Assembly: GCF_947568905.1 (NCBI RefSeq)
Contig: NC_079166.1
Coordinates: 36,704,001 to 36,768,000, forward strand
Length of the DNA: 64,000 nt
Direction of reading: 5' to 3'
Source: Ostrea edulis
Lineage: Eukaryota
Shown here in pieces: positions 802 through 24,592 of this stretch. The position numbers and the translations under genes were made by a program. The notes beneath the pieces were generated by a model. It searched no databases. It had not been told where the DNA came from and saw nothing but the letters and a program-made list of their open reading frames with translations. Within the stretch, counting starts at the first letter, position 1. The number at the start of each line of letters is the position of its first letter.

Positions 802-2854
802 CTAGATCAACTTGCAACCATGAGCTTTTATCGACGCCTGTCCAGTAACCCCCATAGTTCTGTCTACCGTTGTAAGCATAAGAGTTGCCATTTGATTTGT
901 GAGCGGTCATCTGTGCGTCAGGAATCCATCTTTTACTTTGTATAACGCCGAGACTGTTACTTCTACAATCTAAAGTAAAACACCACTAACTGCACAGCTT
1001 ATACTTAATGAAGTAAAACGCCACCGACTGCAGCTTATATTTATTTTAAAAATAAAACACCTCTGAGTGCACAGCTTATATTTAAGAATGTGATTTTCGG
1101 ATTGGTCGAAAACATACTCAGACTTTCAGTTGAAATGAAAATATTAGGATTTGTCGTACCTCCCTTCAAATGAGCAGAATTCGACAAATCTGAGATCAAA
1201 CATTATCCTACCTAGGTTACACGTTCTTCCGCCGTACGGGTGCGCGCAATGACATGTGTAACTTCCCCTTATTTCCTCACAGCGTCCTTCATGGATGCAG
1301 GGATTGGAGTCGCATTTGTTAGCACCTGTTGAAACGCATAAAAGCCAGTACAGTGCAATATATTGTCTTGACGCATTCTGTTTCAGTAAACAACATCGTA
1401 TTTACCCCGAATTAACATCTTAAACACGTTGTCAGCATGTTTCCCATGTTCGTCAAAGGCCCGTATGGTAAAGGTGTATAGCTCCTCTGTATTTGGGGCC
1501 AGCCCCTTCAGGGTACCCCTCACTGAGTCCAGTTTGATTCCTGGTGGCAGCTCTCCGCTAACCAGGTAGTATGTTAGTTTTGTTCCTTCGGGATCCTAAA
1601 TTATATACCGTATTAATTATTTGCAAGCATCACATGTAATGGCATATGCTTAGATGAAAGGTGAAAGTAACAGTGATCAATCAAGCAATACAAAATAGAT
1701 AGTTGGACAAACATGGACCCCTGGACACACCAGAGGTGAGATCAGGTGCCTAGGAGGAAACATCCCTTGTCGACCGATCACACCCACCGTGATCCCTATA
1801 TCTTGAACAGGTAAATGGAATTATCCGTAGTCAAAATCAGTATGCCAGGAACGGTCTAACAAACGGTATGAAACACGTCAGACAGCATTTGACCCAATGA
1901 TAGGTTGTATACTCGTACAATTCAAGAGGTCTTTCGTCCATACCAAGATTTTTGCACCAAGTTGTTTGGTCTCTCTTTTTTATACGCCCGTCTTTATATA
2001 TACCTAAGAGAGGTCAGACTTCTTTTACATCGGTCCCCTCTGTTGTTATAGTATAAAAGAAAGATAACTTCCCAATGCCAGGCTTCCGAAGGCGAGTGCA
2101 TGAACTTTATTGCAGGAAAGTATTTTAGTTCTGTTGATTATATGATCAGTGAAACATAACAACGCAAGTTCTCGTTGAACTTGTAAAATCGATGAAATAC
2201 TCACTGATGCTCTCAATTGAATATTGACTTTTTGACCGCTGTGGAATTCCCCCACATAGCCGAAAGGAGAGTGGTCCTCCCACACTGGCGGGAGGCTGAC
2301 GATAAGCTGTGAAGAAAAACCAGGAAAGGTGTTGCGATATTTTCTTTTGAGGTGGTAGTTGTTCAAAAAGGCACATCATCAATAACAAGTAATGACAATA
2401 TAATCATATTGATTTTATGGAATTTCTAAGAAAACATTTTACATAAATTATATTTTTGTCATACCTGTATCAGATAGAAAAGGTCTTCTCCGTCAAAATA
2501 CACACTTCCGGTTTTATTTGCCCCTGGTGCAATTCTAATGTTTCCATTGTAGCCAGACTAAATTGTACAAAGCGAAAGCATATATTTATATACAATGTGT
2601 GGTTATTCTGTCAGACAGATTTAGTAAACATTATACCAGAAGTGTGAGGTTTCCGTCCTGTTCCGCAATAACGTCAACATGTGGTCGGTGTATATTCAGG
2701 GCGCTGTAAGAATAGTGGGAAGTAGACATCAAAAAGAAGCATTTCTTAACGCTTAACAATTACTGCTGATCATACGGTGAATGACTTACTCGAATGGAGT
2801 AGACGCCGATGCAACGGTCAGCAACGTCCACCACACTGTCAAAGTCCAGAACAT
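802..2854 (-). CDS. Paralog D (3'-partial): secreted cubilin-N-like / Ig-like (He_PIG) / EGF / F5/8 type C protein
   Basis: Exons 2854-2790, 2703-2637, 2557-2465, 2306-2205, 1595-1406, 1325-1212, 969-802 (65, 67, 93, 102, 190, 114, 168 nt). All are GT-AG and phase-compatible. Translation: MFWTLTVWWTLLTVASA...RPHVDVIAEQDGNLTLLSGYNGNIRIAPG...SLPPVWEDHS...DPEGTKLTYYLVSGELPPGIKLD...KCDSNPCIHEGRCE...IPDAQMTAH...SSWLQVDL. Exons 8-9 were not found and are presumably left of base 1. Confidence 0.9.
975..1085. repeat. Three degenerate ~38-nt tandem units next to the paralog D exon 7 acceptor
   Basis: TAAAACACCACTAACTGCACAGCTTATA-like unit seen three times. Confidence 0.55.
1656..1915 (-). mobile_element. 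Penelope-like element terminal fragment in paralog D intron 4
   Basis: Same family as 600-745, extended by GTAAATGGAATTATCCGTAGTCAAAATCAG...CAGCATTTGACCCAATGATAGGTTG. Confidence 0.75.
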
Positions 2855-3238
2855 GACTCAAGTCTCAAGAACTACGCTTTTAAGAATTTAGTCAACCTAG
2901 AACACACACATAAGCAAGATCACTCCTCTCTTAAAACTAATGAAAATAAATAAAACACCGAAACAACAAGCCTTCTGTTCAGTGTTCTTTTCGTATTATT
3001 ACTTGATAGAAACAATAAACGGAAATGCGCACAGAAGTTTAGATGTTACCGGAAAAGTAATTTCATACCTTATGTAGAAATCATCACCTTTCGTTTGTTT
3101 GAGGAAATCTCTAGATACGATTGCAATCTTTGGTAGTTAGAAAACTGTATGAGATTAATATCCGTATCAGATAGAGGCCTCCTGGGTCTCTGCAAAGCAT
3201 TAAAGTCAGATGGTGACGTGCAAAAGGGAAGCGCCAAA
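2855..3238. promoter_or_regulatory. Putative bidirectional promoter of the D/A pair
   Basis: Only 384 bp lie between the divergent ATGs (2854 minus, 3239 plus). The promoter role is inferred from geometry; no TSS data. Confidence 0.6.
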
Positions 3239-5867
3239 ATGTCCAGGCTACTCATCCTCGTATTTTCTGTTTTTATTTTAACGAAATTTGATATTTGTAC
3301 TGCAAGGTAAATTTTTTAAACTTTTCTATATATTATACATTTTATGAAAGGTAATTTTAATCGTTAATGTGACCACACAATTAATTCTGATAAGGACTGA
3401 CTTTATATCAACTGTGGGTTTAACTGAACGACATTTTTTCCAGTTTCTTTGACATCCAATACCCCGATGTCTTCTTTACGGCTGAACAAGGTGGAAATGT
3501 TACGATCAGGGTAAAATACTATCAGAACAACCTTAGAGAATTTGTGAATTACACAGTTTTACAGTCTTTTGTAATTCAATACACCAAAACTAATGCTTTT
3601 TAATGGTAGTTTATATTTCTTGATGTTTTTCTGTATTAGGCTGGGCCAAATGGGGGCGACATTATCATGATTCCACAAGGCAATGGCACGGTTTTCATTG
3701 GCCAGACGGATATGCTTAAACTTTTTCAGGTAAGATCCTTGTCCCAGTATCAAATTGAATTGTGGGATATCGTCCTCATTGTGCTTTTTAATATCGGTTG
3801 AAAACAGCTTTGATAACTTCCTTATTTCTTCCCTTCGCTATTTCATCCTGTAGATTGTCAATAGTCTTCCACCTGTTTGGAGTGAAAAGTCACCGCATGG
3901 AACCCTGGGAACCTTTCTAGGAGGGAAATCAGTGTCTCTCAGTGTTTCTGCTCAGGTATGTCACATATTACCTGGAAATTAAGTAGAAAAATAAGTAAAA
4001 TGTTTTGGAAGGAAAAAATTTAACTCCGATTTATATATCAAATAGGATCCTGAAAATGGAAAAGTTACATACGAAAAGGTATCTGGAGCACTGCCACCTG
4101 GTATTCATTTGGACAAAAATACAGGGGCGATAACTGGACGCATTCCTGACGTTGATGCAACTTACGAATTTGGAATTCGAGTTACAGATAGTCATGGAAA
4201 ATATGCAGATCAAATCTTTTCCATTGATACAAGAGGTTCTCGCATATTGTTAATGTTTGGTTTTTTTTATTAGCGCAACATGATTTGGTGCAATAAGTAT
4301 TTTTGAAGATTTTAAAATAATTCATCTATGCATTTTCGATTTTATATTGTTTCTTTCTCCTTTAAGTGAGTAGTACGATCAAACCGTTACTCTGTAATAT
4401 ACGAGTAATTTTCCATTTTGGTTAAACTTTTTAAAAAAAAATGTTATTAACTGTTTTCATATACAGTGCATATACCTGATATATTAATTTTGTGTGTGTA
4501 ATTGTAGAGAGAGACCAGTGTTTGAGCACACCCTGTTTACATGGGGGAACTTGCAGTGACGATATAGATGATTTTGTATGCGCATGTGCAAAACCTTACG
4601 GTGGAAAAACGTGCAATATAAGTAATATCTGTCTTAGTGTTATTTTGCGATCTACCAAAAATTACTACATCAACATTTTTGTAGAAACTGTCTTTTTCTT
4701 TAGATTGTGGCTCTATGCCTGTTGGAATAGATCTGAACAACAAGAAAATTCCGGACGCACAGATGTCTTGTCACTACTGTTATGGTGACAGTGCTGGAAT
4801 TGACGGTCGGCTTCACGCCCCACAAGGCTGGGTGGGCCAAAATACAAACTCGTGGCTACAGGTAGTGTTTAACATATTTACTGTAGCAATGTCATTTTTT
4901 GTGTGTTGCTTATAGTCAAATGGTTAGAACATCTGGTTAGCAAACTCGTGACTTCGATACAGGCTTTTTTAACACAAATTGAAACTCCTATTAATAGGTC
5001 CTATATTCAGATTTAGCCCTGCAGTTGTACTCCTATTAAGAGGTCATATATTCAGATTTAGCCCTGCAGTGGTACTCCTATTAATATGTTCTATATTCGG
5101 ATTTAGTCCTGCAGTTGTACCCCTATTAAGAGGCCCTATATTCAGATTTAGCCCTGCAGTTGTACTCCTATTACGAGGTCCTATATTCAGATTTAGCCCT
5201 GCAGTTGTACCCCTATTAAGAGGCCCTATATTCAGATTTAGCCCTGCAGTTGTACGTTTGTAGGTTGACCTGGGGAAGGAAATGGAGCTTCATGCTGTAG
5301 CAAACCAAGGCTATACATCATCCAGTTACTACATCCTGACCTACACAATCAAATACAGCGTGGACGGAAACCAGTTCTATGACGTCAAGAACGGAACGAC
5401 CGTCATGGTAAATATTATCTAAGGAATCGTTTTATTTTCTGGGAGTTCGTTTATTGTGGGCAACCCCATTACTGCGAATTTTAAAAAGTTTCATCGAAAA
5501 GCACAATTTACACAATATTTTAATGTGTAGAGAACATCCATAAAAAAAACCAACATGCCAACCAAATCTTGGCAATCCAGGTGAATTGACCCTCCCCAAT
5601 TTAAATAATTCCACTGTATATTACTTTCGTCATATTCCTGAATACAGTTATTATGTTAAAGGATTTGTAAAAACAAATGTGAATGATTCATTTCAGTAAT
5701 GTGTACAAACATTTTACTTTCAGGATTTTAGTGGAAGCAGTAACGTGAACTCCGTAGTAAAACACACATTCCTGACACCGTTTAGAGCACGATTTGTTAA
5801 ATTCATACCGAAGACCTTTCACAGCAAACCCGGGATGAGAGTGGAACTGTACGGATGTGATGTTTAG
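3239..5867 (+). CDS. Paralog A: secreted cubilin-N-like / Ig-like / EGF / F5/8 type C protein, 358 aa
   Basis: Exons 3239-3306, 3444-3510, 3640-3729, 3854-3955, 4046-4235, 4508-4621, 4704-4861, 5264-5407, 5724-5867 total 1077 nt with an open frame. Translation: MSRLLILVFSVFILTKFDICTA...AGPNGGDIIMIPQGNGTVFIGQTDMLKLFQ...SGALPPGIHLDKNTGAITG...QCLSTPCLHGGTC...WLQVDLG...PGMRVELYGCDV*. AATAAA follows at 5883. Confidence 0.93.
4984..5255. repeat. 45-nt minisatellite, about 6 copies, in paralog A intron 7
   Basis: Unit CTATTAAGAGGTCCTATATTCAGATTTAGCCCTGCAGTTGTACTC. It accounts for ORF 4979-5263. Confidence 0.9.
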
Positions 5868-6129
5868 ATCTGAATTGCATCCAATAAAAATATGTAGTCA
5901 TCTTGTCTTCATTTACTTATAGGTCTCATGACTAACTCATTACAATGCGTTTCTGCCCGTTGTCATGCGATATCTGCCGTTTGTAAACTTTGAACTTTTT
6001 TTCAATTCTCTTCTTACACCATTCGACCAGTTTTGGTCACGGGAATGAAAATTGTAAATTTTGTTTTTTACCACAACCTCAAAGGTGAGATAAATACCTG
6101 TTTTATTTATTAACAATGTTCAATTGCAT

Positions 6130-7225
6130 CCATATGTTGATTCGATACATCCCAGTGAACTCAAAATAAAAGACATCAGTCTTCCATATTTGCTTCATAT
6201 TTGTATATTTTATTGAATATGAATCTTAACGGCAAACTGAAAACTCAACTTTATGACAAACGACAATGACAAATCAGCTTCTCCATCGTCAAATTCCCAT
6301 ACTGATTCCACCCACAAGTACTCTGAAGTTGAAATTAAAAATATGCTGGAGTTCCTCATTGACAATATGTTCGTAGTCTTTGGTGATCAGGTCTTCCAAC
6401 ATTCTGTTGGAATTCCCATGGACACGAACTGTGCTCCTTTGGTTTTTGATCTGTTTATATATTCTTATGAGGCAGAATTTATTCAAAAGCTTTTACATGA
6501 GAAGAAAAAATCTCTTGCAGTGGCCTTCATCTAGACATGTAGATATATCGAAGACATTTTATTTATTAACAATAATCATTTGCATTCATATGTCGATTCG
6601 ATATATCCCAGTGAAGTCGAAATAAGAAGACACCACAGAGTCCTCCACATCTTCTTCGTACTTAGATATTTCATTGAAAATAGTTATTAATGACAATCTA
6701 AAAACACAAATTATAACAAACGGGATGATTTCAGCTTCTCCATCGTCAACTTCCCATATTTATGTAGCAATATTCCATAATCACCTGCATATGGTGTTTA
6801 TATATCTCAATTCATTCGATGCACAAGAGCTTGTTCTGCGTATGATCAGTTTTTAAATCGAGAAAGACTGCTTACAATCACGTTGATATTACAGAGTTTC
6901 AACAGTCTCTTTCAGCAGTCAGCATTTTGCAAATTCTATGGTCGTTATAACGATCTAGTTTGCCCATACAACCTTTTATTTGGTCAAATGCTTTCTGATA
7001 TGTTTCATACGAATTTTTAGGCCGTTCTTTACACACTAATTCTCTGTTTATCTGATCGAGATTTAGGGCTCACGGCGGGTGTGACTGTTCGACAGGGGAT
7101 GCTTACTCCTTCTAGGCACTTGATCCCACCTCTGGTATATCCAGGGGTCCGTATTTGCCCAGCTTTACTTTGTATTACTTATAAGAGTTATGAGATTGAT
7201 CACTGTTCGTTATCTTCACCTTTTC
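6130..7225 (+). mobile_element. Degenerate Penelope-like retroelement reverse transcriptase fragment plus 3' terminal sequence
   Basis: Translation includes MLEFLIDNMFVVFGDQVFQHSVGIPMDTNCAPLVFDLFIYSYEAEFIQKL, then RYIEDIL, then DDFSFSIVNFPYLCSNIP and AYGVYISQ. These are RT motifs typical of PLEs. Stops and frameshifts are present. Confidence 0.85.
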
Positions 7226-7269
7226 GTGTACCAATTTTCCATGACCTGTATATGACGTTTATGTCTCTC

Positions 7270-7660
7270 GATTGATTCGATAGGCTAGAGAATGTTTTGC
7301 GTATGATCAATTTTTAAATCAATGCGAGTTACTGACAAAAAGTTTATATTATATGGGTTTTAACAATTTTGTATGAAATAAACATTTCACAAATTCTATG
7401 GTCGTTATAATGATCTTATTTGCAAAGGTAGGTCGAATGCCGTCTGACATGTTTCATACATGTACCAATTGTTCGGCCGTTCTCAAAATAGAGGGCATAT
7501 GGCAAGTGTGGTCCGTCAATAGGGAATTCTTACTCCTCCAAGGCACCTGATTCCACCTTTGTTGAGTTTATGGATCTGTCTTTGCCCTACTCTCAATTTG
7601 CTATTCTTTACAGGATGAATGAAATTAATCACTGATTGCTCCACTTTCAAAATCAATCTT
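7270..7660 (+). mobile_element. Second, more decayed Penelope-like fragment
   Basis: Repeats the AAATTCTATGGTCGTTATAA..GATCT and TACTCCTCC.AGGCACCTGAT motifs of 6950-7220. Confidence 0.65.
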
Positions 7661-8799
7661 TTAACACATTTTCCTCCTTTCTCTTGAACTTGAAGCAGAC
7701 AAACCGGGTTTACAGTTACAATGAGCTGGGACACATCTATTAATAATGTCTAAAGTTTCTTGCTCAGTGTTTGAGGCCCCAGGGTGGGTGTTCAATAGGT
7801 CATAGAGTAAAATCTATTATTTCAACCTTTCAATCTGCTTCGCTCAGAAACATCTTGCAGAAAAAATTGGGTGCTTAGTTAATTTATAATAGGCATAAAG
7901 TTTCCTACTAAAATTGTGAAATCTATGACCCAAGGGTGTGGGATCCAGGTACATGGTGGTGCATAGGTTATATACACTATCAACAAATCGTTGAAATTGT
8001 TCTTCACTCCTGGATATTCATCAGACAAATGGTAGCATAATTATAAAGTCTTTTAAAGACTTTTAATGAAATTGTAAAACTTCAATAACCCTTGGTCTGG
8101 TGTATAGGCTTTGGGACATAACTTTACAGAATTTATGTAATAAACCTGTAAAAACCTCCCTCACTCCCACAATTCTAGCCGACAAATTTGATAAATGGTT
8201 ATCTTGAGCTTATAGCCCTCTTCCAGTAGTAAGGAGCTCATATCCCCATGTTTAACCATAGTACCTTGTTTGAGGTTCTGTTGTATTTCGGATGAATATT
8301 TCTATATGATCCTAAGCAAGCGTTGTTGATTTTTTTTTTTCAGATAACAAATGTCATTCTTTTTTTTTTTTTACGAGATTTATGAATTAGCTTCATGATA
8401 TAACCACCGAAATTGATTCACAAAACTATTGTGGTGTAAATTGGCAAACATAGAACACCTACGATATTGTAGGTGTAGTACACCATTACACGTAACATAG
8501 TTAGACCTAATATCACTTGATCTACCGCAAGAGAACCGCAAGCTTAAAAGCTTCTTCACAAGATATCGGCAATTATCCCGCCAAAATGAGGGGTGAATTT
8601 TGCTACTGTCATGAAGTGAGTTTTTGATCAAATTATGAAACCAGGACAATTGATTCTTGCATAGAGGTTTTAAGAGCCTTTGGTCAACGTTATTGCAAAT
8701 GTGACAGATTCATTTTTCTACATAAAAATAATAATGCAATTTTTTTTCTTTACAAGTTTTAATTATTAAAAGAAAATCCCACAATTGTTATTTCAAGAG

Positions 8800-11695
8800 T
8801 TAAAGAATTTTTGTTTGTCGCTGGTAATGACATCCATATAGGTCTACCTTCAGTTGCGGTTTGTTGTGATATGAAGTAGGATGAAATCGAACAAATCGCG
8901 CATCAACAGGAACCGGAAGTGAATACTTGTAATTCCCAGTGGATGCATGAAAGGCCTAGGAGAAAATCATCAGATTATAACCAAATATTTGTTACAATCT
9001 GTTACAATCGTATAATAATTATTCGAAATGATTTGTAAAGACATGATTTCGAAATTTCCTTTTAGCTGATGAAACCTCTGTCTTGAACTAAAATGTAAGT
9101 TAAATTCGTGCTTACATGTTTTCCTCCATTTGTGTTGTTAACGGAGAGGAATGTGGTGCCATCTACGCTAACAGAAAGGGTGTATGCGGTACTGTAGTAC
9201 GAAGAACTGTAACCCTGGTTCCGTACAGCGTACACTTTGGTCAGGTTACCTTATAACACAAAGGAATACATCGGTAAATACCCATTACAAACAACGTAAG
9301 CACCAACACTTTCAAGAAACTCTTTGAATTCTCTAACTCCATATTACATTTCTATATCTGCTGAAACATCGTATAATAAATTTGTTATATATGAAGACAT
9401 TACCTAAATCTACCTGTAACCACGAGTTGCTGTTAGATCCCACCCATCCATATCCAGAAGCACCATATCGTCCATTAGATTCCAAGTAGGTACTGTACGT
9501 AAGGTATCCGGACATTTGCGCATCTGGTATCTTGTTTCTATCATTTACCCCCAAACTCTGGGACACACAAGCTGACATAAACGAAGATCTATGTGATTTA
9601 ATACGCGATTAACAATCAAGGTCTGATAGGAGTAATAGAAAATATAAATGGAGAGTTTTACGCAACTTCGCATTTCAATGTTTACATGTAACAGTTATCA
9701 AGACACAGGGATAGACATTAACTTTTCTTCTTTCTTGCCCTTCGGGCAAGTAAACTCGAAGTTTTACTTGTCCGAATGAAAAACTTAGTTGTCCGAAATA
9801 TTTTAGGCTCTGATAAGCCTGTCAACCAGTAACTCTAATTATCTTAATTATCTTTCTCTGTCAATGGTGGTACAGTACGATCTACTAGAATGGGCCTTCG
9901 CTATAATCTAACGATTTGGTAAAAAAAAAAAAAAAAAAAAACCAGTAAGATATGGAGTTGGACTGTACGTTCTAATATTTGATATTCATCAAGTTTAACA
10001 CAATTATTATAATAATCACATTTCCTATTTAAATAATCACTTGCCCCATCGGGCAAGTGTGTATCGAGTTTTACTTGTCTGAACTGGGTTTTCACTTGCC
10101 TCGGGCAATCGGACAACCGTTAATGTCGATCCCTGAGGCATCATTTAGTTTTGTTTTATTATATCATTCCATTTAAAACTGATAATGAAAAAACTTTCAA
10201 TTATCATGCCGAATCCCTATAGCAAATCCGTAATTAGGTAGCACAAATATAGAAATACTCACAAAATTCACATCTTGGACCTCCATATCCGGTTCGGCAT
10301 GTGCAGTTGAACCAACCTTTTGTATCTGTACACGTTCCACCGTGTAAGCAAGGGTTTGTTTCACAGTGATCTTTCACTACACAATCAACACAGAAATCAA
10401 TGCTAAAATTTATTATCACAAATAAATAAATAAATAAATAAATGATGATATGTTTCATGCGGATTTATTTTTATTTTTTTCAATTTCCATTGCAAGTTAT
10501 TCAAAAGGATATACCAATAGTTTCCATTTTGAAAAGAGCGTCAGCATATTTGTTGTGTTCATCGATGGCCCGAATGGTAAACTTGAAAATGTCTTCTACA
10601 TCCGGTATAATGCCTGTAATATGACCCGTGACGTTGTTCAGGGTCACGCCTTCCGGTAGTTCTCCAGAAACAACCATGAAATGGAGATTCGTACCTTCAG
10701 GATCCTAGTTTTAAATTAAAATGGCTGTATCGCAGCAAGTTCATATTCTACTGTTATGTTACAGTGTGCAAAATCGTAGTCGTTAAACTTACCTCGGCAT
10801 CAAGTTTGATGTTGATTCTCTGCTCGCCAATAAATGTTCCAAAGAAACCCATGTGCGCATGCTTTGACCAAATCGGAGGCATGCTTTTTGCCACCTGTGA
10901 ATGTGTACAATGTTACTGTATACGTTTATACAAATTTACCATTGTGGCATTACGAACGACTTGTAGATCAGCAATACCTCTATGATTTTCAGAATGTCGT
11001 CGTTCTCAAACATCACGGATCCGCCCGGTCCTGGTTTGAGGTATACATCTTTCAGGTCGTAACCAGACTGTAAAAATAATAAAGACAAACAAATATGTAC
11101 TTGATTTTGATTTCATGATTGGATTTTATGTTCAAGTATGTTTAAGAACGAGTTTGAAGTGTTTTTGTCAACTTTTAACTTCAAAGATCGCAATAAAGTG
11201 TTATCGTCACCATTTTGAATAAATCAGATGTTACATGTAACTTAATTGATGTGTAAACTAAATCTATCTATAGATTTTGTAATATGTCATAATTATTGAG
11301 TTGTTTGGTTGTTTGTTTTTTTTTAATTTATTTATTGGGGGGGGGGGGGGGGGGGGTCATCGGCACGTATGCTAAATCTTCGAAATGTCACATACACCAC
11401 TAAGATGAAGAGGAGATCATTTTCTTACCTGTAGAATAATGTCGCCATCAGCCGGTGCGTGCACGGAGAGACTAGGATATTGTATATCCAGAACACTGCA
11501 TAAGAAGAGGAGCTTTTTAATATCATAGTTTACATCAGAATTCTTTACAGGTAAATGTATATCATCAGTTTTCATTTTTAAGAATCCCAGACTTTTGAAT
11601 TAAAATTGAATTGAATATTGATAAGAAAATACCCACCCATCGTCACAGCGAATACTAGCTATGAAAAGTACAACAGGAAAGAGCCTGGCCACCAT
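8800..11695 (-). CDS. Paralog C: secreted cubilin-N-like / Ig-like / EGF / F5/8 type C protein, 359 aa
   Basis: Exons 11695-11637, 11495-11429, 11067-10978, 10894-10793, 10704-10515, 10376-10263, 9571-9404, 9249-9116, 8955-8800 total 1080 nt with an open frame. Translation: MVARLFPVVLFIASIRC...DIQYPSLSVHAPADGDIILQSGYDLKDVYLKPGPGGSVMFENDDILKIIE...HCETNPCLHGGTC...WLQVDLGNLTKVYAVRNQG...ARFVRFHP...LKVDLYGC...*. Confidence 0.92.
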
Positions 11696-11944
11696 TTTAA
11701 TGGCCTTGTGAAGACGTTTCCGACAAGGTCACAGCTCCAAAACGAGGGCGTAAAATAAAACTTCTGAGTTACTAGATACTGAAACATGGGGTCAGAGAGA
11801 TTACTGCTAAAATAATTAATAACATAAATAGACTGATTAATTATTTGGTAAACACACGAATTTAAAAATCGTCAAGGAAGAGCTTATGTACTAGGGCACC
11901 TTTTAATTTCGTCGTTTTTCTCTTCACTGACCCGTATATGCAGG
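11696..11944. promoter_or_regulatory. Putative bidirectional promoter of the C/B pair
   Basis: Only 249 bp lie between the divergent ATGs (11695 minus, 11945 plus). Inferred from geometry. Confidence 0.6.
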
Positions 11945-14900
11945 ATGCAGAATTTCATATATTCAATTTTTGTTTTACCTGGAATTGTTTATGGAAGGTA
12001 AAGAGTATGATGATAACAAATTGTATATTTTTTTTATATTATAGCAGGAATTGTCGTTCTGTTAAAACAAATGTTGTGACGCAGATTTCAGAACCTATTG
12101 TCTATTGTGAACAACTATACATTAATTGAAAGCGAAATGTATTTTTAAAACTGATGAACTTCTTTTCTTAAAGCTGTAAAAATGTTACAGAATTCCATTT
12201 AATGACTCATATTCCCGTTGTATTTTCCAGTTTCTTCCAGATTGATTATCCCAATGTGAATGTCTCTGCTGAACCCGGTGGAGACCTCACGTTCGAGGTT
12301 AGTATAGTCTCGTTCCAAAAGGGTATTTTCCTCTGCATGCTCTCTAGCCTTGTTCAATTAACTGATCTAACATGATCACAAAAATAGCTGTTAAAGCATT
12401 GAACATCCATGGATATCTAATTTGTTTTTGTATGTGAATTTATGTCAGTTGCGTTATATTGCTAACAGGCTGGTGTAGGTGGTGATGTTATTTTGAAACC
12501 AGGAGCTGGAGGCACCGTAATTATTGCAGGAACGGATCTCAGAAAATTTATAGAGGTGATTTTGTAAACAGTTCTGTCCATATTCTATAATTGATAGTTT
12601 TATGTAAGGCTTGCCTAAATAGATATATTAGCCACGACTTCGAATTTCAAACTTGTAATACAAAATCAAAATTTTCAGAAAGTGAAGAGTCTTCCGCCCA
12701 TATGGACGAAACAGTCGGTTCACGGGTCACTGGGAGCGTTTACTTCCGGTACAAAATTGGCCGTGTCGGTAGAAGCAATGGTAAATATGTTTTACATTTC
12801 TATATCTTCTTGGTGGTAGGTGACAGTTTCAGCCAGTTGAAGCACGCCTCTATAAAAAGCGCCATTTTAATATGTAAATGATGTTGAAATTCCCTCGGCC
12901 AAATTGTCAGACGGTGTTTTCTTGAATATATAGTACTATGAACGATTTCGATTCTTAAAGAGGTTCGCACCTGACATTTGAAGTAATGTCAATTTTTTTG
13001 GGAAGTGTATCTTTGATTTCTACATTGAAGAAGAATTAGGAAATTAAAAAGAAAAACTGGGGTCGCAATGCTTGTTATTGAGCTATAGTGATATAAATAT
13101 GACCTTATTGCACTTAAAACTTATTCAACTAAACTTGATTTTTCTGTTAGTGTCAACACAACATAAGCAACACAAATCAATCATTACATAAAATAGATAC
13201 ACAATCATGTCCTCTAACACTACAGATGAAAAAATAAATTAATACTAGTAAAGGAAATAAATAATGACCCTTTTGCACTTGATATACGCAAAACTTCATG
13301 ATATCAAAATTGAGAGTTTAAAAAGACATATTAGGAGTAATGTCAATTTCTAAAATTTTACATAATTTTCAAGGTCTGGTCTTCCAATTTAAAATGCAAC
13401 TAAAAAAAAGTGGGGGTTGGAGATCAAAGTTTTTGGCGAAAATACTGAATTTTTATACAAAATTTCGAATGAATTAATTAAAACTTTTTTAAGAATCGGT
13501 GTACTGTTTGGAAAAATATATCAACCAAGTTAATAAATTACAACATTTGAACTAGTTCCAAGTCTCAACTACCTGTATCATAAATTATAAAACTGAAATA
13601 CACATATAGGGATATAAAAATAGACGATACATTGGATTAAACAGAAACTGTAATATCGTGCAGAATTAGAACTTTTTGATTAGTGAATCCTTCGCCCCAA
13701 AATATAGTCCCTGTCAAACACTTTCAATTTGAATTGACACAAAAAAAAAATTCAGCTGGATAAGGTTCAGCAATAGATGTGTAATATATTTGCACCAATA
13801 GGATCAGTTTTGAACCAGTGAATACTTAGTTGTAGCATCCTGCGCAGTTGTATTCAAAAGCTCAGGAGCTAACTTCCTTAATCAAAAATGTCTCGAAATT
13901 GCGAGATTGGTAAAGAGCGGGTTTTGTTTTTTTATCAGCAAATGATGCAATGTTTTGGGGGGAAATGTATAATTTTCGTCGATTTCGTGGAATCTACATA
14001 CATGTACCTATGAGTTCAGGTTACGCCAAGTCAAACTGACTTGACTCAATTCCTTCTCTCCTCCCGGAGATTAGGGCTTCAACGTGCATCTTCCAATATG
14101 GAGAGTTGGGGTTTTGTTTTTACCACGAAGTGACATGATTGTTTATTGAAGCAAAAATGTGATAATTGAAAAAGAAAGTAAAAGTTGACTACTTTCAAAT
14201 CATTTTATTTTTTTCAAAATCATTTAATGTTTTCTATCAAAAATCATGTCTGGCATGATCTCTATTTATGTATACTCAAAAAGGGTTCATGCATTATAAC
14301 TTTGTTGAAGTATCTAGTAAAACTGTTTTATTTCTTTTTGACTTTGTTGAAGTATCTAGTAAAACTGTTCTATTTCTTTTTAACTTTGTTGAAATATCTA
14401 GTAAAACTGTTTTATTTCTTTTTGACTTTGTTGAAGTATCTAGTAAAACTGTTCTATTTCTTTTTAACTTTGTTGAAATATCTAGTAAAATCGTTTTATT
14501 TCTTTTTAACTTTGTTGAAGTATCTAGTAAAACTGTTCTATTTCTTTTTAACTTTGTTGAAATATCTAGTAAAATCGTTTTATTTCTTTTTAACTTTGTT
14601 GAAGTATCTAGTAAAACCGTTCTATTTCTTTTTAACGTTGTCCCTATTCTCCTCAAACAGATTATATAGAGCTAGTATCAGATATAGCCATGGGGTTGAT
14701 GTACATGTATTTATATTCTTTGCGACAAGAATGAATTTGGATATTCAATATTTCATAGTGATTAAAGATTTGAATTGCACATTGATCTATAGCAATGCAT
14801 ATGTCGGTTTGACTTTGGTGAAACCTTAACATCCTACATAAAATGCTAAAAGAATTAGAATATTCTCCATAAACACATTTTGACTATCTTCTCATCCACG

Positions 14901-16496
14901 AACCAGCTTTTCTTTCTCTCTCTCAAAGACCCCACGAAATTGTATGTCTGTATCGGTGAGGAAAACATACAAGATTCAGTGTTTTATCCACTACAGGACC
15001 CAGATGGTGGTAACATACAGTATAGGGTAATTTCCGGTCATCTACCACCCGGAACATCTCTGAACTCTTCCACTGGAGTCATCACCGGTACAGCCCCCGA
15101 TATAGACGCAACATATACATTCGGAATTCGCGCTACTGACCGCCATGGAAAATATGCTGATGGGACGTTCTCTATTGATATAAGAGGTTTCAAATGATTC
15201 TTAATATTTTACTTTACGTTTAAAACTAACCTTTTGTGGAATAACATTGAAACTTTTCAAACAATACAGAGCAATTTCGATGATTTCATACTCGCCTATT
15301 TAAATGCCTATATAACAACGCAAAATGTACCAACGACACAAAATGTAATAATTTTACGTTCTTACATTGTGCGTCGAGTTTAAGACAGAATGCAATTACA
15401 CAAAATGTGATATTAATTCTCTTTAATTTAATTAACAATATCAGGATCTTTATATATGACCGCAATTATTACATTTGATGTGTCATTATATTTTGTGTCG
15501 ATTTCAACGCAACATGTAATTAACACAATTTATTTTTATCTAATTTCTTTTTTAAATAATGAATACTATGTACAGAAATTAAGACAATTATATCGTAAAT
15601 TCAATAAGAGAACAATTATCTGATTCATTTAAAGCACGCATTAATTCAAACTTAAAGATATCATTAATTGATTATATTTTCCATTACTTGAGTTTATAAT
15701 ACATTGGTATATTTATAACATTTTGCGTTATTACATTCTGTACATTGAACTCGATGGAAAATGCAATAAGTCAAAAAGTAATATTGAGTTTATTATATTT
15801 TTCGTTATTACATTTTGCGTTGCTACATTCCTATTTATGTAGCACATGACGTGGATTGATTGATTGTATATTGTTTAACGTCCCTCTCGGGAATATTTCA
15901 CTCATATGGAGACGTACACATGACGTAGATAAACATATAGTAACGTATTATGTAGAACGAGATCAGTGTAGCAGCAACCCTTGTCAAAATGGCGGCACAT
16001 GTTCGGATGATTTTGGAAGGTACGACTGCGCATGCTCAACTGACTATGGAGGACAACACTGTGAGCTACGTATGTATTCACTTTATCTCTCAGCAAAATT
16101 GTCTGTATAATCTGTACAAGTATGATTACTGGAGACTCGCTTTCTTAACCAGGATGCGACTCAAACCCCTTTGGAGTTGACAACGCGAAAAAGACAATCC
16201 CAGACGCCCAAATGTCCGCACACTACACGTTTTCTAATCATTTTGCCTCCAATGGTCGATTGCATAGTCGTGACGGTTGGATCGGAGAGGCTTCCAACTC
16301 ATGGCTTCAGGTTTATGTCAAATTTGCTTAGATGTTTGCTTTAACTATGTACACCATTCCTAATTAGTCTAGTGTCAGTATCCTAAAGTTAGAATCAGTC
16401 TAGGTGGTAACTTGAATTTAAATGCAAAATAATCAATATATCAATTTTATTTTCAATTAATCGTCTTTATATGAAAGGTGAAGATAACGAACAGTG

Positions 16497-16548
<52 letters not shown>

Positions 16549-17081
16549 TATAACATGTAAAACAAATCTGTTATTTGTTTGGTGTAGGTTGACCTGGGAG
16601 AGACACGGGTTGTTCACTCAGTCGCTACACAGGGTTATCGGTCTTCCACCTACTACACACTGTCGTACAAACTTCAATATAGCACAGACGGAAACAACTT
16701 CCACGACGTCATCGGGAGTAACGGATCCCCAAAGGTACACTCACTCTGCATGTAAATTCAATTTACAGAGTCATCAACCTATGTGACTACAAATGCGAAA
16801 TGGTGTTAACGCTGCTGTTGTTTCACCTCAAGCTTTTAAAATTCGCCATGAGAATTGGCCTTGATAGTCTAAGGGTGTACTTCTGTCGCGTCGAGTTCAT
16901 CTGCAGTCGCGTTTCAGCGCTTTCATGTCTATTTTAGGAATTCTTTGGAAGCAGCGCTTACGACTCGGTGATTAAACACTACCTTCCCAACAGAATCAGT
17001 GCAAGGTTCATCCGGTTTGTTCCGCTAACATGGCACAATGGTGGGAAACCAGGTCTTCGTGTGGAAGTGTATGGATGTTGA
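11945..17081 (+). CDS. Paralog B: secreted cubilin-N-like / Ig-like / EGF / F5/8 type C protein, 353 aa
   Basis: Exons 11945-11997, 12231-12297, 12469-12555, 12679-12780, 14997-15186, 15956-16069, 16153-16310, 16588-16734, 16938-17081 total 1062 nt with an open frame. Translation: MQNFIYSIFVLPGIVYGS...AEPGGDLTFEAGVGGDVILKPGAGGTVIIAGTDLRKFIE...DPDGGNIQYRVISGHLPPGTSLNSSTGVITGT...QCSSNPCQNGGTC...PGLRVEVYGC*. Confidence 0.93.
12880..13900 (+). mobile_element. ~1-kb non-autonomous dispersed repeat; second copy inverted at about 43215-44150
   Basis: AAAAACTGGGGTCGCAATGCTTGTTATTGAGCTA (about 13034) and TACTTAGTTGTAGCATCCTGCGC..AAAAGCTCAGGAGCTAACTTCCTT (about 13823) recur as reverse complements near 43995-44045 and 43212-43265. 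Boundaries are approximate. Confidence 0.7.
14293..14637. repeat. 42-nt minisatellite, about 8 copies, in paralog B intron 4
   Basis: Unit AACTTTGTTGAAGTATCTAGTAAAACTGTTCTATTTCTTTTT. It accounts for ORFs 14185-14829, 14268-14669 and 14294-14656. Confidence 0.92.
15311..15827. mobile_element. MITE-like element with ~19-bp terminal inverted repeats
   Basis: Left TATAACAACGCAAAATGTA; right TACATTTTGCGTTGCTACA. Internal sub-repeats of the same motif. No clear TSD. Confidence 0.6.
15855..15914 (-). mobile_element. SINE-like family 3' tail fragment
   Basis: GATTGATTGATTG...AACGTCCCTCTCGGGAATATTTCACTCATATGGAGACGT matches the end of the full copies at 24593 and 25549. Confidence 0.7.
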
Positions 17082-20593: not shown

Positions 20594-21197
20594 TATACGA
20601 CACCGCTCCTCAAGCCACAGATCGCACAAGCGCGGCACGGGAGATAACTCCAAATGAGTGCATGAAACGTCCACTGGGGAACTCGAAGGGGGATGAGATG
20701 CGTTATTAAGATTATCATTAATGCTCAATTTTGTCCTACATGGAAATAATCGATGAAAGCTATCAAAAAATACATTAAAAGAAACTGCAATTTTATTATA
20801 AAAGCTGAGTTTTTAATCTACGATAGATGAAGACGAAGAGGAAATTGATTTGTGGGGGAAAAATCTGCATTGATGAAACATTGATCAAAGATTACCCAAT
20901 ATCAGCAAGGTAAATTGATCCATTTAAGCCTTTCCTATACTCTATACTATATGAATCATTTTGGTTTAGCCCTGGATAAATGTTTTTAGAAGGAATAAAA
21001 GATGTCGAAATAAAATCTACCACTTAACGTCAAACACGTAATATCAATACATGTATATCCATGTGTTGGACACTCTACATGAATACTGCTATCTAGTGGG
21101 AAATGTTAGTAATTCTTTGATAAGGAGGCGACATCTAAATCGTGCGCAGAAAAAGTCACGCTCTAAATAGAGAGGTTTCTGTAACGGTAATATCGTA

Positions 21198-22871
21198 GTG
21201 TATATCAGATTGTTCCTAGAGAGCCACTGTTATACATCTAACTACCATCACGTGTACATCAGATTGTTCCTAGAGACCCACTGTTATACAAATAACTATC
21301 ATCACGTGTACATCAGATTGTTCCTAGAGACCCACTGTTATACAAATAACTATCATCACGTGTACATCAGATTGTTCCTAGAGAGCCACTGTTATATAGC
21401 TAACTACCATCACGTGTACATCAGATTGTTCCTAGAGAGCCACTGTTATACAAATAACTATCATCACGTGTACATCAGATTGTTCCTAGAGAGCCACTGT
21501 TATACAAATAACTATCATCACGTGTACATCAGATTGTTCCTAGAGAGCCACTGTTATACAAATAACTACCATCACGTGTACATCAGATTGTTCCTAGAGA
21601 GCCACTGTTATACATCTAACTACCATCACGTGTATATCAGATTGTTCCTAGAGAGCCACTGTTATATAGCTAACTACCATCACGTGTACATCAGATTGTT
21701 CCTAGAGAGCCACTGTTATACAAATAACTATCATCACGTGTACATCAGATTGTTCCTAGAGAGCCACTGTTATACATCTAACTACCATCACGTGTACATC
21801 AGATTGTTCCTAGAGAGTCACTGTTATACAAATAACTATCATCACGTGTATATCAGATTGTTCCTAGAGAGCCACTGTTATATAGCTAACTACCATCACG
21901 TGTATATCAGATTGTTCCTACATAGCCACTGTTATATAGATAACTACCATCACGTGTGTATCAGATTGTTCATTTAGAGCCACTGTTATACATCTAACTA
22001 CCATCACGTGTACATCAGATTGTTCCTACATAGCCACTGTTATACAAATAACTATCATCACGTGTACATCAGATTGTTCCTAGAGAGCCACTGTTATATA
22101 GCTAACTACCATCACGTGTACATCAGATTGTTCCTACATAGCCACTGTTATACAAATAACTACCATCACGTGTATATCAGATTGTTCCTAGAGAGCCACT
22201 GTTATACAAATAACTATCATCACGTGTATATCAGATTGTTCCTTTAGAGCCACTGTTATACAAATAACTATCATCACGTGTATATCAGATTGTTCCTAGA
22301 GAGCCACTGTTATATAGCTAACTACCATCACGTGTACATCAGATTGTTCCTAGAGAGCCACTGTTATATAGCTAACTACCATCACGTGTACATCAGATTG
22401 TTCCTAGAGAGCCACTGTTATACAAATAACTATCATCACGTGTACATCAGATTGTTCCTAGAGAGCCACTGTTATATAGCTAACTACCATCACGTGTACA
22501 TCAGATTGTTCCTACATAGCCACTGTTATACAAATAACTACCATCACGTGTATATCAGATTGTTCCTAGAGAGCCACTGTTATACAAATAACTATCATCA
22601 CGTGTATATCAGATTGTTCCTTTAGAGCCACTGTTATACAAATAACTATCATCACGTGTATATCAGATTGTTCCTAGAGAGCCACTGTTATATAGCTAAC
22701 TACCATCACGTGTACATCAGATTGTTCCTAGAGAGCCACTGTTATATAGCTAACTACCATCACGTGTACATCAGATTGTTCCTAGAGAGCCACTGTTATA
22801 CAAATAACTATCATCACGTGTACATCAGATTGTTCCTTTAGAGCCACTGTTATACAGATAACTACCATCAC
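21198..22871. repeat. 54-nt minisatellite, about 31 copies
   Basis: Unit TACATCAGATTGTTCCTAGAGAGCCACTGTTATACAAATAACTATCATCACGTG. It has a few recurring variants and no unique spacers. Confidence 0.97.
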
Positions 22872-24592
22872 CAGTTCTTATTGTATAATTCATAAATTAA
22901 ACTAATCATGATCAAGTTAAAATCCAATTCACCGGCAGTATTCAAAGAATAACATTTATTTACAAGATATATGTGTTACATATACCAAAAAAGGGTCCCA
23001 TGAGGCATACATGTGCACATGTGTGTAAACAATATGTACTTCAACAAGATAAAGGGAAAATATTTTCATATCGAATAGCTTGAATTGTAATTGCACATGT
23101 ATATATCTTTTCTCTGTATGTCAAATATTAACTGCTTATTACATGCAATCTGTTGCTTTTAATCAGTAATATTGTTGGTATGTTATTGTACGGCTCATGC
23201 GAGAATTTCTACACTACAGTGGACAAGGCACCAACTTCAGACTTATGCACGAGCTAACGGTCATAACAAGGAGGGAGGGTTCTTAACCGTGTCAACGATT
23301 ACCGTGAAACAGGACCTGCGCTGTATAGGATCCGAAAGACCCATTGATTTACTTATGCATAGCCCACATACATGTACATACATACACATGTACACACGTA
23401 CAAACGATTATACACACACACACATATATAACATGTACAGACATACATAAATGCATGCAATGCATTGGATACATACATATATAATTGCATACATACATAT
23501 ATACATACATACATATGTATTACACTTGTTTTCGTATTCATAAACTATATATTAGTTTCTCTTCTGGTGTTAAAAGTGGAGAACTGCAGCACGAATCTGC
23601 CAAAGCTTTTAGGATGAGTAAACGTTCAGGGTTGCATCTGAGGCAATGAAACAGATTTCATTTCCGATATCCCGTGTGTTGTATTGTAAGCATGTTCTGA
23701 TTGAAACTAGTAATTAAGCATTGCTTTAACAATTGGACAGCTACCATATTTAATTATTTTTTCTGTGAGACCCAAGGACTGATTTGAAGGACTGAACATG
23801 TAATGTTTGACATCTTTTAATGCTACTACAAAATTCTGTCCAAATCAACATTTTTTCATTTCTGAATTTGGAAGCAAAGGAGCAATGGTTAATAGTGTAC
23901 ATTATAAGCACGTGGTATCGTCGGTTTTCAAAGGGGGGGGGGGTAGCCGAAAATAATTTTCGACAAGCAAAATAAAAAGGCTTTAAAAAAAGCAAACAAA
24001 TAATTGTAGATGTATATACATGTATAAGCTTCCATAATGATGAACTAATTGTTAAAAGTTTATACTTTATACAGAATCAACATAAAATCCAATAGTAGGT
24101 ACTGGTAAATACTATCATTTCTTTCTGCATTTCAGAACAGGGGTTTGAACATGCAATGTTTTTTTTTTTATACATTTCGGACAACATGCGGAAGAGAATG
24201 AGTTATTAAAATACTGAAATATATTTTTCCATTATTTCGTTCAGAAATGTAAATTTTTCAAAACTATTTCTGCCAGCTTCATCTTTATTTTTGTCGGATT
24301 GATTTTAACACACCCATCATTACAGTATTTGTCTAATATATTAAGTTTGTGATAGTAATCCCTACCGTACGTTTGAGAATAAAACCTAGGCACCATGATG
24401 CACAAAGCAGTGAATAATAGGATTATTGAGCTTGATTAAATTAAGGGATTTATCTAAATATTTTGGTACATATATGCAAGTCATTTACAAATATCTTGAA
24501 ATTCATCTTATGCAGCGGAAGTCAGTAATTTTGTTCTTGATTTTCACACACGATATACTGTTTTGATACATATTTTAAATTATGCTATTTAA

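What the first reader, a model, noticed from the sequence alone, without database searches (positions are those of the whole stretch)
2790..12297. Two head-to-head gene pairs with 384-bp and 249-bp spacers: a duplicated divergent cassette
Seen: D(-)/A(+) ATGs are at 2854/3239 and C(-)/B(+) ATGs at 11695/11945. D and C share an exon 3 starting SGY and the same exon 7 intron position. A and B share an exon 3 starting AG and the other intron position. Inference: an ancestral divergent pair was duplicated as a unit, and both tight spacers were kept although the introns filled with repeats. Established analogy: collagen IV genes are head-to-head pairs whose products form heterotrimers. Co-transcription could set the stoichiometry of minus-type/plus-type heterotrimers.
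Basis: partly seen in the sequence, partly recalled or inferred. Interest (0 to 1): 0.72.

Follow-up and report, generated by a model that had tools for sequence, protein, structure and literature searches.

The report
Ancient duplicated head-to-head gene pairs
Two back-to-back pairs of related secreted-protein genes in an oyster genome are copies of one two-gene unit that has kept its divergent layout and short shared spacer across molluscs for roughly half a billion years, which points to a shared promoter, although no expression data could be obtained.

Summary
The start codons lie at 2854(-)/3239(+) and 11695(-)/11945(+), giving spacers of 384 and 249 bp. D and C share an exon 3 starting SGY, A and B one starting AG, and intron 7 sits 10 nt apart in the two types.

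All four are clean nine-exon genes. Each encodes signal peptide, unassigned N-module, He_PIG, EGF and one discoidin domain. NCBI names the relatives EDIL3-like or lactadherin-like.

D's last two exons and a fifth, unpaired paralog E lie left of the window.

Comparative evidence supports duplication as a unit:
- The layout B/C|A/D recurs in Solemya and Saccostrea.
- Both pairs are intact in Mya, although about 45 kb apart.
- One pair was seen in each of two scallops.
- D/A is conserved in abalone (433 bp), and a chiton has one plus/minus pair (498 bp).
- Start-to-start spacers are 246-600 bp in 10 of 12 cases.
- Oyster spacers hold conserved blocks, while most introns and intergenic DNA do not align.

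The best tree has the predicted shape, but AU tests cannot reject other rootings. Relative duplication depths match (2.1 against 1.9).

Shared transcription and heterotrimers remain untested, because no RNA run was found. The cubilin resemblance is marginal (E 0.058).

The scan's other notes on this stretch cover the protein and the intron shift.

The parts
802..2854 (-). Gene D (minus-type), exons 1-7 of 9. Exons: 2790-2854, 2637-2703, 2465-2557, 2205-2306, 1406-1595, 1212-1325, 802-969. Exons 8 and 9 lie left of the window, at -795..-665 and -7710..-7561 relative to base 1.
   Evidence: Model. Exons 8 and 9 were found and confirmed by alignment to Saccostrea L020. Orthologs are P0151, P0034, P0041 and P0060.
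2855..3238 (.). D/A spacer, 384 bp between the two start codons. It has no TATAAA and is single-copy in the window.
3055..3164 (.). Three blocks conserved with Saccostrea echinata inside the D/A spacer: 3055-3079, 3097-3140 (holds TTGCAAT) and 3151-3164 (GATTAAT). They lie about 75-185 bp upstream of the A start codon.
   Evidence: Pairwise alignment. blastn gives no hit in this spacer at E 1e-3, so these are short blocks only.
3239..5867 (+). Gene A (plus-type), 9 exons, 358 aa. Exons: 3239-3306, 3444-3510, 3640-3729, 3854-3955, 4046-4235, 4508-4621, 4704-4861, 5264-5407, 5724-5867.
   Evidence: The end of exon 8 was set to 5407 from the ortholog P0163, which is 86% identical. Pfam hits: He_PIG 7e-11, EGF 6e-9, F5_F8_type_C 9e-7.
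8800..11695 (-). Gene C (minus-type), 9 exons, 359 aa. Exons: 11637-11695, 11429-11495, 10978-11067, 10793-10894, 10515-10704, 10263-10376, 9404-9571, 9116-9249, 8800-8955.
   Evidence: The ortholog is P0031 (52% identity). The exons align to Saccostrea L020.
11696..11944 (.). C/B spacer, 249 bp between the two start codons. About three quarters of it aligns by blastn between two oyster genera, and the pairwise alignment spans all of it.
   Evidence: The Saccostrea spacer is 246 bp.
11813..11854 (.). Most conserved block of the C/B spacer, about 38 of 42 bases identical to Saccostrea. It is AT-rich with TAATTA and GATTAAT cores.
11724..11731 (.). CAAGGTCA, conserved in Saccostrea as TCAAGGTCA. 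It resembles an NR5A/ERR-type half site. The resemblance is from memory and no binding was tested.
11945..17081 (+). Gene B (plus-type), 9 exons, 353 aa. Exons: 11945-11997, 12231-12297, 12469-12555, 12679-12780, 14997-15186, 15956-16069, 16153-16310, 16588-16734, 16938-17081.
   Evidence: The ortholog P0162 is 90% identical and is carried by an intron-free contig, L021, with a 55-nt 5' UTR.

Best explanation
The stretch holds two copies of an ancient two-gene unit. Each unit is one 'minus-type' gene (D, C) and one 'plus-type' gene (A, B) of a family found here only in molluscs.

The encoded proteins are secreted. Each has a signal peptide, a conserved N-module of about 55 aa, He_PIG, EGF and one discoidin (F5/8 type C) domain. 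The two genes of a unit are transcribed away from each other across a spacer of a few hundred bases.

Proposed history:
1. An inverted duplication made the first plus/minus pair before the last common ancestor of living molluscs. This is shown by a chiton pair that has both intron-7 states.
2. That pair was then duplicated in tandem as a unit, giving minus-plus-minus-plus. This happened before the last common ancestor of bivalves, shown by identical layout in Solemya and oysters. It probably happened before the gastropod-bivalve split, which is inferred from the tree.
3. Later, single minus-type genes such as E were added.

Inferred mechanism: each spacer is a compact shared (bidirectional) promoter region that couples the expression of one plus-type and one minus-type gene. 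Selection against breaking that coupling has kept the pairs and their short spacers intact, while introns grew, repeats invaded and the cluster was otherwise rearranged.

Why coupling matters is not shown. It may reflect co-assembly of the two proteins or a shared site of expression.
For: **Gene models and domains:**

**Fifth paralog and genomic place:**

**Family members in other molluscs:** bivalves, abalone and a chiton.

**Synteny**
- Ylistrum: A(-)/D(+).
- Mizuhopecten: B(-)/C(+), 331 bp.
- Haliotis: A(-)/D(+), 433 bp.
- Solemya: B(-)/C(+) at 502 bp, then A(-), and A(-)/D(+).
- Mya: D(-)/A(+) at 596 bp and B(-)/C(+) at 600 bp, about 45 kb apart with other genes next to each pair.
- Chiton: plus(-)/minus(+), 498 bp.
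- Saccostrea: E(-) D(-) A(+) ... C(-)/B(+), with spacers of 364 and 246 bp.

**Intron 7:** the state follows type in every species examined, chiton included.

**Trees:** plus clade 100/99; A clade with Haliotis 99/93; B clade 100/99; D clade with Haliotis 99/93; C/E group 95/91. The chiton genes fall outside the A, B, C and D clades, and the best tree has minus-types as one clade.

**Relative depth:** the ratio of duplication depth to oyster-scallop divergence is 2.1 for A-B and 1.9 for C-D. Minus-types evolve about 1.6 times faster, which explains 53% against 41% identity at equal age.

**Constraint on the spacers**
- About three quarters of the C/B spacer aligns by blastn between oyster genera, and the pairwise alignment spans all of it, with a block about 90% identical.
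- The D/A spacer has three conserved blocks.
- blastn finds nothing in the A-C intergenic region or in most introns.

**Transcript contig:** an intron-free contig of a B ortholog has a 55-nt 5' UTR that is roughly colinear with the spacer next to the start codon.
Against: - No transcription data of any kind for this genome. None of the four runs found is on record as RNA. Start sites, co-expression and the absence of upstream 5' UTR exons are therefore not shown.
- The base just before B's ATG follows a pyrimidine tract plus CAG that could also serve as a splice acceptor.
- The sequence tree does not root the family. AU tests leave D+plus (p 0.34) and C/E+plus (p 0.59) open, and support for a minus-type clade is 17-30.
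- The two spacers share no sequence. No motif was common to the spacers of different classes.
- Two spacers are long: Ylistrum D/A at 1241 bp and Solemya D/A at 3696 bp by annotation.
- In abalone the C-group genes have no plus-type partner in the stretch seen, and no B-type gene was sampled.
- Adjacency could persist partly by inertia.
Confidence: 0.7

Rival explanations
1. The two head-to-head pairs arose separately. An older array of minus-type genes (C, D, E lineages) existed first. One inverted duplication created a plus-type gene beside D. A later single-gene duplication of that plus gene landed head-to-head beside C.
For: AU tests do not reject trees in which the plus clade groups with D alone (p 0.34) or with the C/E group alone (p 0.59). 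C is no closer to D than to A or B by identity or path length. In abalone the C-group genes lack a plus partner in the stretch seen.
Against: - It needs a second, independent insertion in the same divergent orientation at the same sub-kb distance.
- A direct tandem duplication of a minus-plus unit predicts exactly the observed order minus-plus-minus-plus, as seen in the oyster and in Solemya.
- The chiton plus and minus genes both fall outside the conchiferan A/B and C/D clades in the best tree.
- The relative depths of A-B and C-D match.
Confidence: 0.12
2. The layout is a unit duplication, but its persistence is passive. The spacers hold two independent promoters, the genes are not co-regulated, and the pairs stay together only because few rearrangements happened to fall in a few hundred bases.
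For: There are no expression data. No motif is shared between the two spacers or across classes. Two lineages tolerate spacers of 1.2 and 3.7 kb. Short targets are rarely hit by chance.
Against: - The cluster itself was rearranged repeatedly without splitting a pair. E sits at different places in oysters and scallops. The two pairs are about 45 kb apart in Mya. C-group genes lie elsewhere in abalone.
- Gene spans vary from 2.5 to 34 kb, while 10 of 12 spacers stay within 246-600 bp.
- The spacers are among the few non-coding stretches that align between oyster genera.
Confidence: 0.15
3. The arrangement is an annotation or assembly artefact, or some of the genes are pseudogenes, so no real cassette exists.
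For: The gene models here rest on sequence and homology alone. D has a 6.7-kb intron running out of the window.
Against: - All five models are open, with GT-AG at all 40 introns and conserved phases.
- The same layout is present in an independent assembly of another oyster genus.
- Orthologs of every gene exist across molluscs.
- An intron-free contig of the B ortholog exists.
Confidence: 0.02

Closest known systems
Collagen IV gene pairs (COL4A1|2, COL4A3|4, COL4A5|6)
   Same: Paralogs of two subfamilies are arranged head-to-head across a short shared promoter. The pair is conserved across metazoans, and further pairs were made by duplicating the pair as a unit (PMC12141075, read, which cites Poschl 1988 and Burbelo 1988 for the bidirectional promoter).
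   Different: There is no collagen or NC1 domain here. Heterotrimer formation is established for collagen IV and untested here. The copies here are tandem on one chromosome rather than dispersed. The family was found here only in molluscs.
EDIL3 (Del-1) / MFGE8 (lactadherin) EGF-discoidin proteins, the names NCBI gives these genes
   Same: They are secreted, with an EGF domain followed by an F5/8 type C discoidin domain. The EGF exon phase and the last discoidin intron position are shared with a cnidarian lactadherin-like gene.
   Different: There is one EGF and one discoidin domain, rather than 2-3 EGF domains and two discoidin domains. There is an added He_PIG domain and a conserved N-module with no Pfam match. 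The names are automatic and no orthology was shown.
Cubilin N-terminal trimerising beta-helix (PDB 6GJE chain B)
   Same: A profile of the N-module gives a weak hit to the cubilin N-terminal fragment over about 39 residues (E 0.058). The N-module is conserved in sequence yet modelled at low confidence as a monomer, with pLDDT 44-68.
   Different: The hit is not significant: E is 0.72 with minus-types alone and there is no hit with plus-types alone. The stronger hits are repeat-inflated matches to designed propeller blades. No oligomer was modelled or tested.
Bidirectional promoters of divergent gene pairs in general
   Same: The start-to-start distance is well under 1 kb, there is no TATA box in either window spacer, and the pairing is conserved across species.
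   Different: Most known pairs join unrelated genes. Here both partners are paralogs, and the pair itself has been duplicated. The bidirectional activity is inferred, not measured.

Membership tests
Head-to-head paralog pair duplicated as a unit (collagen IV type of gene organisation) | Two paralogs on opposite strands, 5' ends facing, spacer under about 1 kb | tested here: met
   384 and 249 bp between start codons.
Head-to-head paralog pair duplicated as a unit (collagen IV type of gene organisation) | Each pair holds one member of each of two subfamilies | tested here: met
   The plus clade (A, B) has support 100/99. The minus-types (C, D) share the other intron-7 position. Every pair examined in seven other species is plus with minus.
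Head-to-head paralog pair duplicated as a unit (collagen IV type of gene organisation) | The pairing is conserved in orthologs of distant lineages | tested here: met
   Seen in Saccostrea, two scallops, Mya, Solemya, Haliotis and a chiton.
Head-to-head paralog pair duplicated as a unit (collagen IV type of gene organisation) | The gene tree shows the two pairs as mirror duplicates, (D,C) and (A,B), of equal age | tested here: inconclusive
   The best tree has this shape and the relative depths are 2.1 against 1.9. Support is only 17-30, and AU tests do not reject other rootings.
Head-to-head paralog pair duplicated as a unit (collagen IV type of gene organisation) | One promoter region drives both genes (start-site mapping, reporter) | not testable with these tools
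   No RNA run was found. There is only indirect support: conserved spacer blocks and a 55-nt 5' UTR of a B ortholog.
Head-to-head paralog pair duplicated as a unit (collagen IV type of gene organisation) | The products of a pair assemble into one heteromer | not testable with these tools
   Only a monomer fold was available. The N-module has low confidence in it.
EDIL3 / MFGE8 (lactadherin) family | Signal peptide, EGF domain(s), F5/8 type C domain | tested here: met
   Pfam EGF 5.8e-9; F5_F8_type_C 9.3e-7 and 5e-4 on separate exons. Full-length relatives carry PF00008 and PF00754.
EDIL3 / MFGE8 (lactadherin) family | Two tandem discoidin domains (C1-C2) and no other globular domain (a feature recalled from general knowledge) | tested here: not met
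   There is one discoidin domain, plus He_PIG (7e-11) and an N-module without a Pfam match.
Cubilin-type N-terminal trimerisation module | Significant sequence or fold similarity to the cubilin N-terminal beta-helix segment | tested here: inconclusive
   6gje_B scores E 0.058 with the whole family, 0.72 with minus-types and nothing with plus-types. The monomer model of this part is unstructured.
Collagen IV | Gly-X-Y triple-helix repeats and an NC1 domain | tested here: not met
   The translations and Pfam scans show none.

The most novel reading that the evidence does not exclude
The plus-type and minus-type proteins are obligate partners. They co-assemble through the conserved N-module, possibly a cubilin-like intertwined beta-helix, into mixed oligomers that display discoidin lectin heads. 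The bidirectional spacer, conserved across the phylum, exists to fix their stoichiometry. This would be a second, independent invention of the collagen IV logic (paired genes, paired chains) in an unrelated protein family, kept for about 500 million years.
Probability: 0.15. Interest if true: 0.8.

Novelty: new member of a known kind. Interest (0 to 1): 0.55.

Why it matters
Divergent pairs of paralogs that are kept together and duplicated as a unit are rare, well-studied exceptions; collagen IV is the textbook case. This is a clean second example in an uncharacterised mollusc protein family. One pair is present in a chiton, the D/A pair in abalone, and both pairs across bivalves.

The result gives three things:
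- A natural test bed for how compact bidirectional promoters survive deep time in invertebrates.
- A concrete hypothesis that the two protein types work together.
- A corrected five-gene annotation for proteins now mislabelled EDIL3, lactadherin or coagulation factor VIII-like.

Tried and rejected
- **RNA evidence.** The look-up of sequencing runs returned four holders (kind not recorded), none on record as RNA. Read laying was therefore not used, and start sites could not be mapped.
- **Similarity between the two spacers.** None was found, only chance 7-9-mers.
- **Motifs shared across classes.** GATTAAT, TAATTA, CAAGGTCA, TTGCAAT, TATAAA and AGGAAG were checked in 12 spacers. GATTAAT and CAAGGTCA occur only in the oyster spacers. 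The others are scattered, and none is common across classes.
- **Rooting by cnidarian outgroup and AU tests.** The result was inconclusive.
- **Polarising the intron-7 shift with Nematostella.** Its intron lies at a third position, 15 nt upstream of the plus-type site, so it decides nothing.
- **Second word search for gastropod and chiton relatives.** It returned five proteins, three of them queries. The neighbours' proteins were rebuilt from locus DNA in scripts instead.
- **Literature.** No paper was found for the accession numbers tried. Nothing on this family was found under its NCBI name with 'oyster'.
- **He_PIG exon as query for the big search.** This was rejected beforehand, because bacterial multi-repeat proteins would swamp the list. 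The exon 7 alignment was used instead.
- **Joined (spliced) protein models.** These were built only inside scripts for local alignments and trees. They were not sent to any database search, family scan or fold tool. Exons were searched by reference, and ortholog P0163 (86% identical to A) stood in for the fold.

Full report
**What is in the sequence.** The window is base 36,704,001-36,768,000 of a 98-Mb contig of an 895-Mb genome. The best protein matches are to Saccostrea and Crassostrea (78-90% identity for A, B and E), which places it among oysters.

I read the two spacers and built gene models from stop-free pieces, paralog alignment and splice signals. This gave four complete nine-exon genes with GT-AG at every intron:
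- A(+) at 3239-5867.
- B(+) at 11945-17081.
- C(-) at 11695-8800.
- D(-), which starts at 2854.

Intron 7 lies at phase 0 after SWLQ in A and B, and 10 nt further on in C and D.

Pfam on single exons gives He_PIG (7e-11), EGF (6e-9) and F5/8 type C (9e-7, 5e-4). The first roughly 55 residues after the signal peptide (exons 2-3) match nothing.

A search of the whole genome with the He_PIG exon found a fifth copy 15 kb to the left of the window. After fetching 40 kb of flank, two things became clear:
- D's exons 8 and 9 lie outside the window, at about -0.7 and -7.6 kb.
- A complete fifth gene, E(-), lies at -11.7 to -17.4 kb.

The cluster is therefore E(-) D(-) A(+) C(-) B(+), and E has no divergent partner. 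Identities are A-B 52.9%, C-D 40.9% and B-C 43.4%, with the rest at 36-42%. By identity alone only A+B stand out.

**Relatives.** The joined proteins have no reference, so they were not sent to any search. I searched with an alignment of exon 7 taken by reference. That gave 174 hits, among them full-length proteins of 356-373 aa.

A word search with nine of them gave 33 relatives, and a cluster look-up gave names. The family is present in oysters, scallops, mussels, clams, the protobranch Solemya, abalone and a chiton. NCBI's automatic names for it are EDIL3, lactadherin, MFGE8 or coagulation factor VIII-like.

No paper on the accessions, or on the name together with oyster, turned up anything on this family.

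**Gene order elsewhere.** Looking up where these proteins are encoded gave the decisive evidence. The gene ranges given are start to stop codon.

| Species | Layout seen | Start-to-start spacer |
|---|---|---|
| Saccostrea echinata | E(-) D(-) A(+) ... C(-)/B(+), as in the window | 364 and 246 bp |
| Ylistrum (scallop) | A(-)/D(+) | 1241 bp |
| Mizuhopecten (scallop) | B(-)/C(+), followed by an E-type gene | 331 bp |
| Solemya | B(-)/C(+), then an A-type gene | 502 bp |
| Solemya, 18 kb further on | A(-)/D(+) | 3696 bp by annotation |
| Mya | D-type(-)/A(+) and B-type(-)/C-group(+), about 45 kb apart | 596 and 600 bp |
| Haliotis rubra | A(-)/D(+) | 433 bp |
| Chiton Liolophura | plus-type(-)/minus-type(+) | 498 bp |

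In Mya, other genes lie next to each pair. The intron-7 position follows gene type in every one of these genes, chiton included.

The plus/minus pair therefore predates the common ancestor of living molluscs, and the four-gene layout predates the common ancestor of bivalves.

**Trees.**
- An ML tree of 38 proteins gives a plus clade (100/99), which splits into a B clade (100/99, with Solemya) and an A clade (99/93, with abalone).
- It also gives a D clade (99/93, with Solemya and abalone) and a C/E group (95/91). The chiton minus gene sits near the centre.
- I then added the rebuilt neighbours and two cnidarian outgroups. In that tree the chiton plus gene falls outside A and B, the chiton minus gene falls outside C/E and D, and scallop Y joins oyster E (97).
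- The best tree has all minus-types as one clade and C/E+D as one clade, which is what a unit duplication predicts. Support is only 17 and 30.
- AU tests do not reject D+plus (p 0.34) or C/E+plus (p 0.59, with slightly higher likelihood).

One quantitative check fits equal age. Oyster-scallop ortholog distances are 0.86 and 0.75 for A and B, against 1.23 and 1.42 for C and D, so minus-types evolve about 1.6 times faster. The duplication depth divided by that divergence is 2.1 for A-B and 1.9 for C-D.

The order minus-plus-minus-plus is what a direct tandem duplication of a minus-plus unit gives. Separate origins would need a second insertion in the same orientation at the same short distance.

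**Are the spacers constrained?**
- The two spacers share no sequence with each other. No motif was common across classes.
- Between this oyster and Saccostrea, blastn aligns exons, a few short introns and one non-coding stretch of note, which is most of the C/B spacer.
- The pairwise alignment of the C/B spacer shows a block about 90% identical at 11813-11854 and a conserved CAAGGTCA at 11724-11731.
- The D/A spacer has three short conserved blocks at 3055-3164.
- The A-C intergenic region and most introns do not align.
- Spacers stay at 246-600 bp in 10 of 12 cases, while gene spans range from 2.5 to 34 kb. Repeats fill the introns here.
- The cluster was rearranged around the pairs: E's place differs between oysters and scallops, and the pairs are separated in Mya. 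No pair was split in any species examined.

**Transcription.** No RNA run was found, so co-transcription is not shown. The only transcript-like evidence is an intron-free 1237-nt contig that encodes a B ortholog (90% identical). Its 55-nt 5' UTR is roughly colinear with the spacer next to the start codon in this oyster and in Saccostrea.

This is weak. The contig is from another species, and the sequence before B's ATG could also serve as a splice acceptor.

**Heteromers.**
- The collagen IV comparison holds for gene layout (PMC12141075), not for the proteins.
- An AlphaFold2 monomer model of the A ortholog is confident for He_PIG, EGF and discoidin. It is unstructured for the conserved N-module, with pLDDT 44-68.
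- A profile of the N-module hits the cubilin N-terminal fragment only marginally: E 0.058, or 0.72 with minus-types alone, and nothing with plus-types alone.

Oligomerisation, and mixed oligomers in particular, remain a hypothesis.

**Verdict.**
- The unit duplication and the retention of tight spacers are well supported by comparative gene order, and allowed but not proven by the tree.
- The shared promoter is a reasonable inference from conservation.
- The heterotrimer idea is untested.

This is a new, deep example of a known kind of organisation, in an uncharacterised family found here only in molluscs.

Noticed in passing
window 21171-22900 (+): A tandem array of about 1.7 kb with a 54-nt (18-codon) period. 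It stays open in one reading frame, and its copies are 85-97% identical at the protein level.
   Followed up: no
window 11338-11362: A run of about 25 G inside intron 2 of gene C.
   Followed up: no
L008-L009 (about 13 kb left of window base 1): Intron 1 of gene E holds a stretch that looks like a tRNA-derived SINE (GGGATTCGAACCCGGG core). A second family element in the same intron, at about -12.9 to -12.5 kb, matches DNA inside the Saccostrea D gene span.
   Followed up: no
L016:27032-33730 and L013:639-3769: Solemya velum has two nearly identical A-type genes, which are sisters in the tree with support 100. The A gene, or the whole A/D unit, was therefore duplicated again in that lineage. 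The DNA between the two loci was not seen.
   Followed up: partly
L011:22697-27511; L020:1395-5100: The E-type gene lies between C and A in the scallop Mizuhopecten, but beyond D in oysters. The two group together in the tree (97), so E was relocated once without disturbing either pair.
   Followed up: partly
L018:2001-9005: A Nematostella lactadherin-like gene shares two features with the mollusc family: the phase-1/phase-1 EGF exon and the position of the last discoidin intron. Its first discoidin intron lies 15 nt upstream of the plus-type site, which is a third position.
   Followed up: yes
L014:294-19210: Abalone has two tandem C-group genes (382 aa and P0028, sisters in the tree) lying tail-to-tail with the D-type gene. 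No plus-type partner lies in the stretch seen, and no B-type abalone gene was sampled.
   Followed up: partly
window 9404-9571 and 4704-4861: The 10-nt difference in intron 7 position separates all plus-type from all minus-type genes, chiton included. It is therefore as old as the plus/minus split itself. It cannot be a simple slide of splice sites, because the same residues (VDLG) are coded on opposite sides of the intron.
   Followed up: partly
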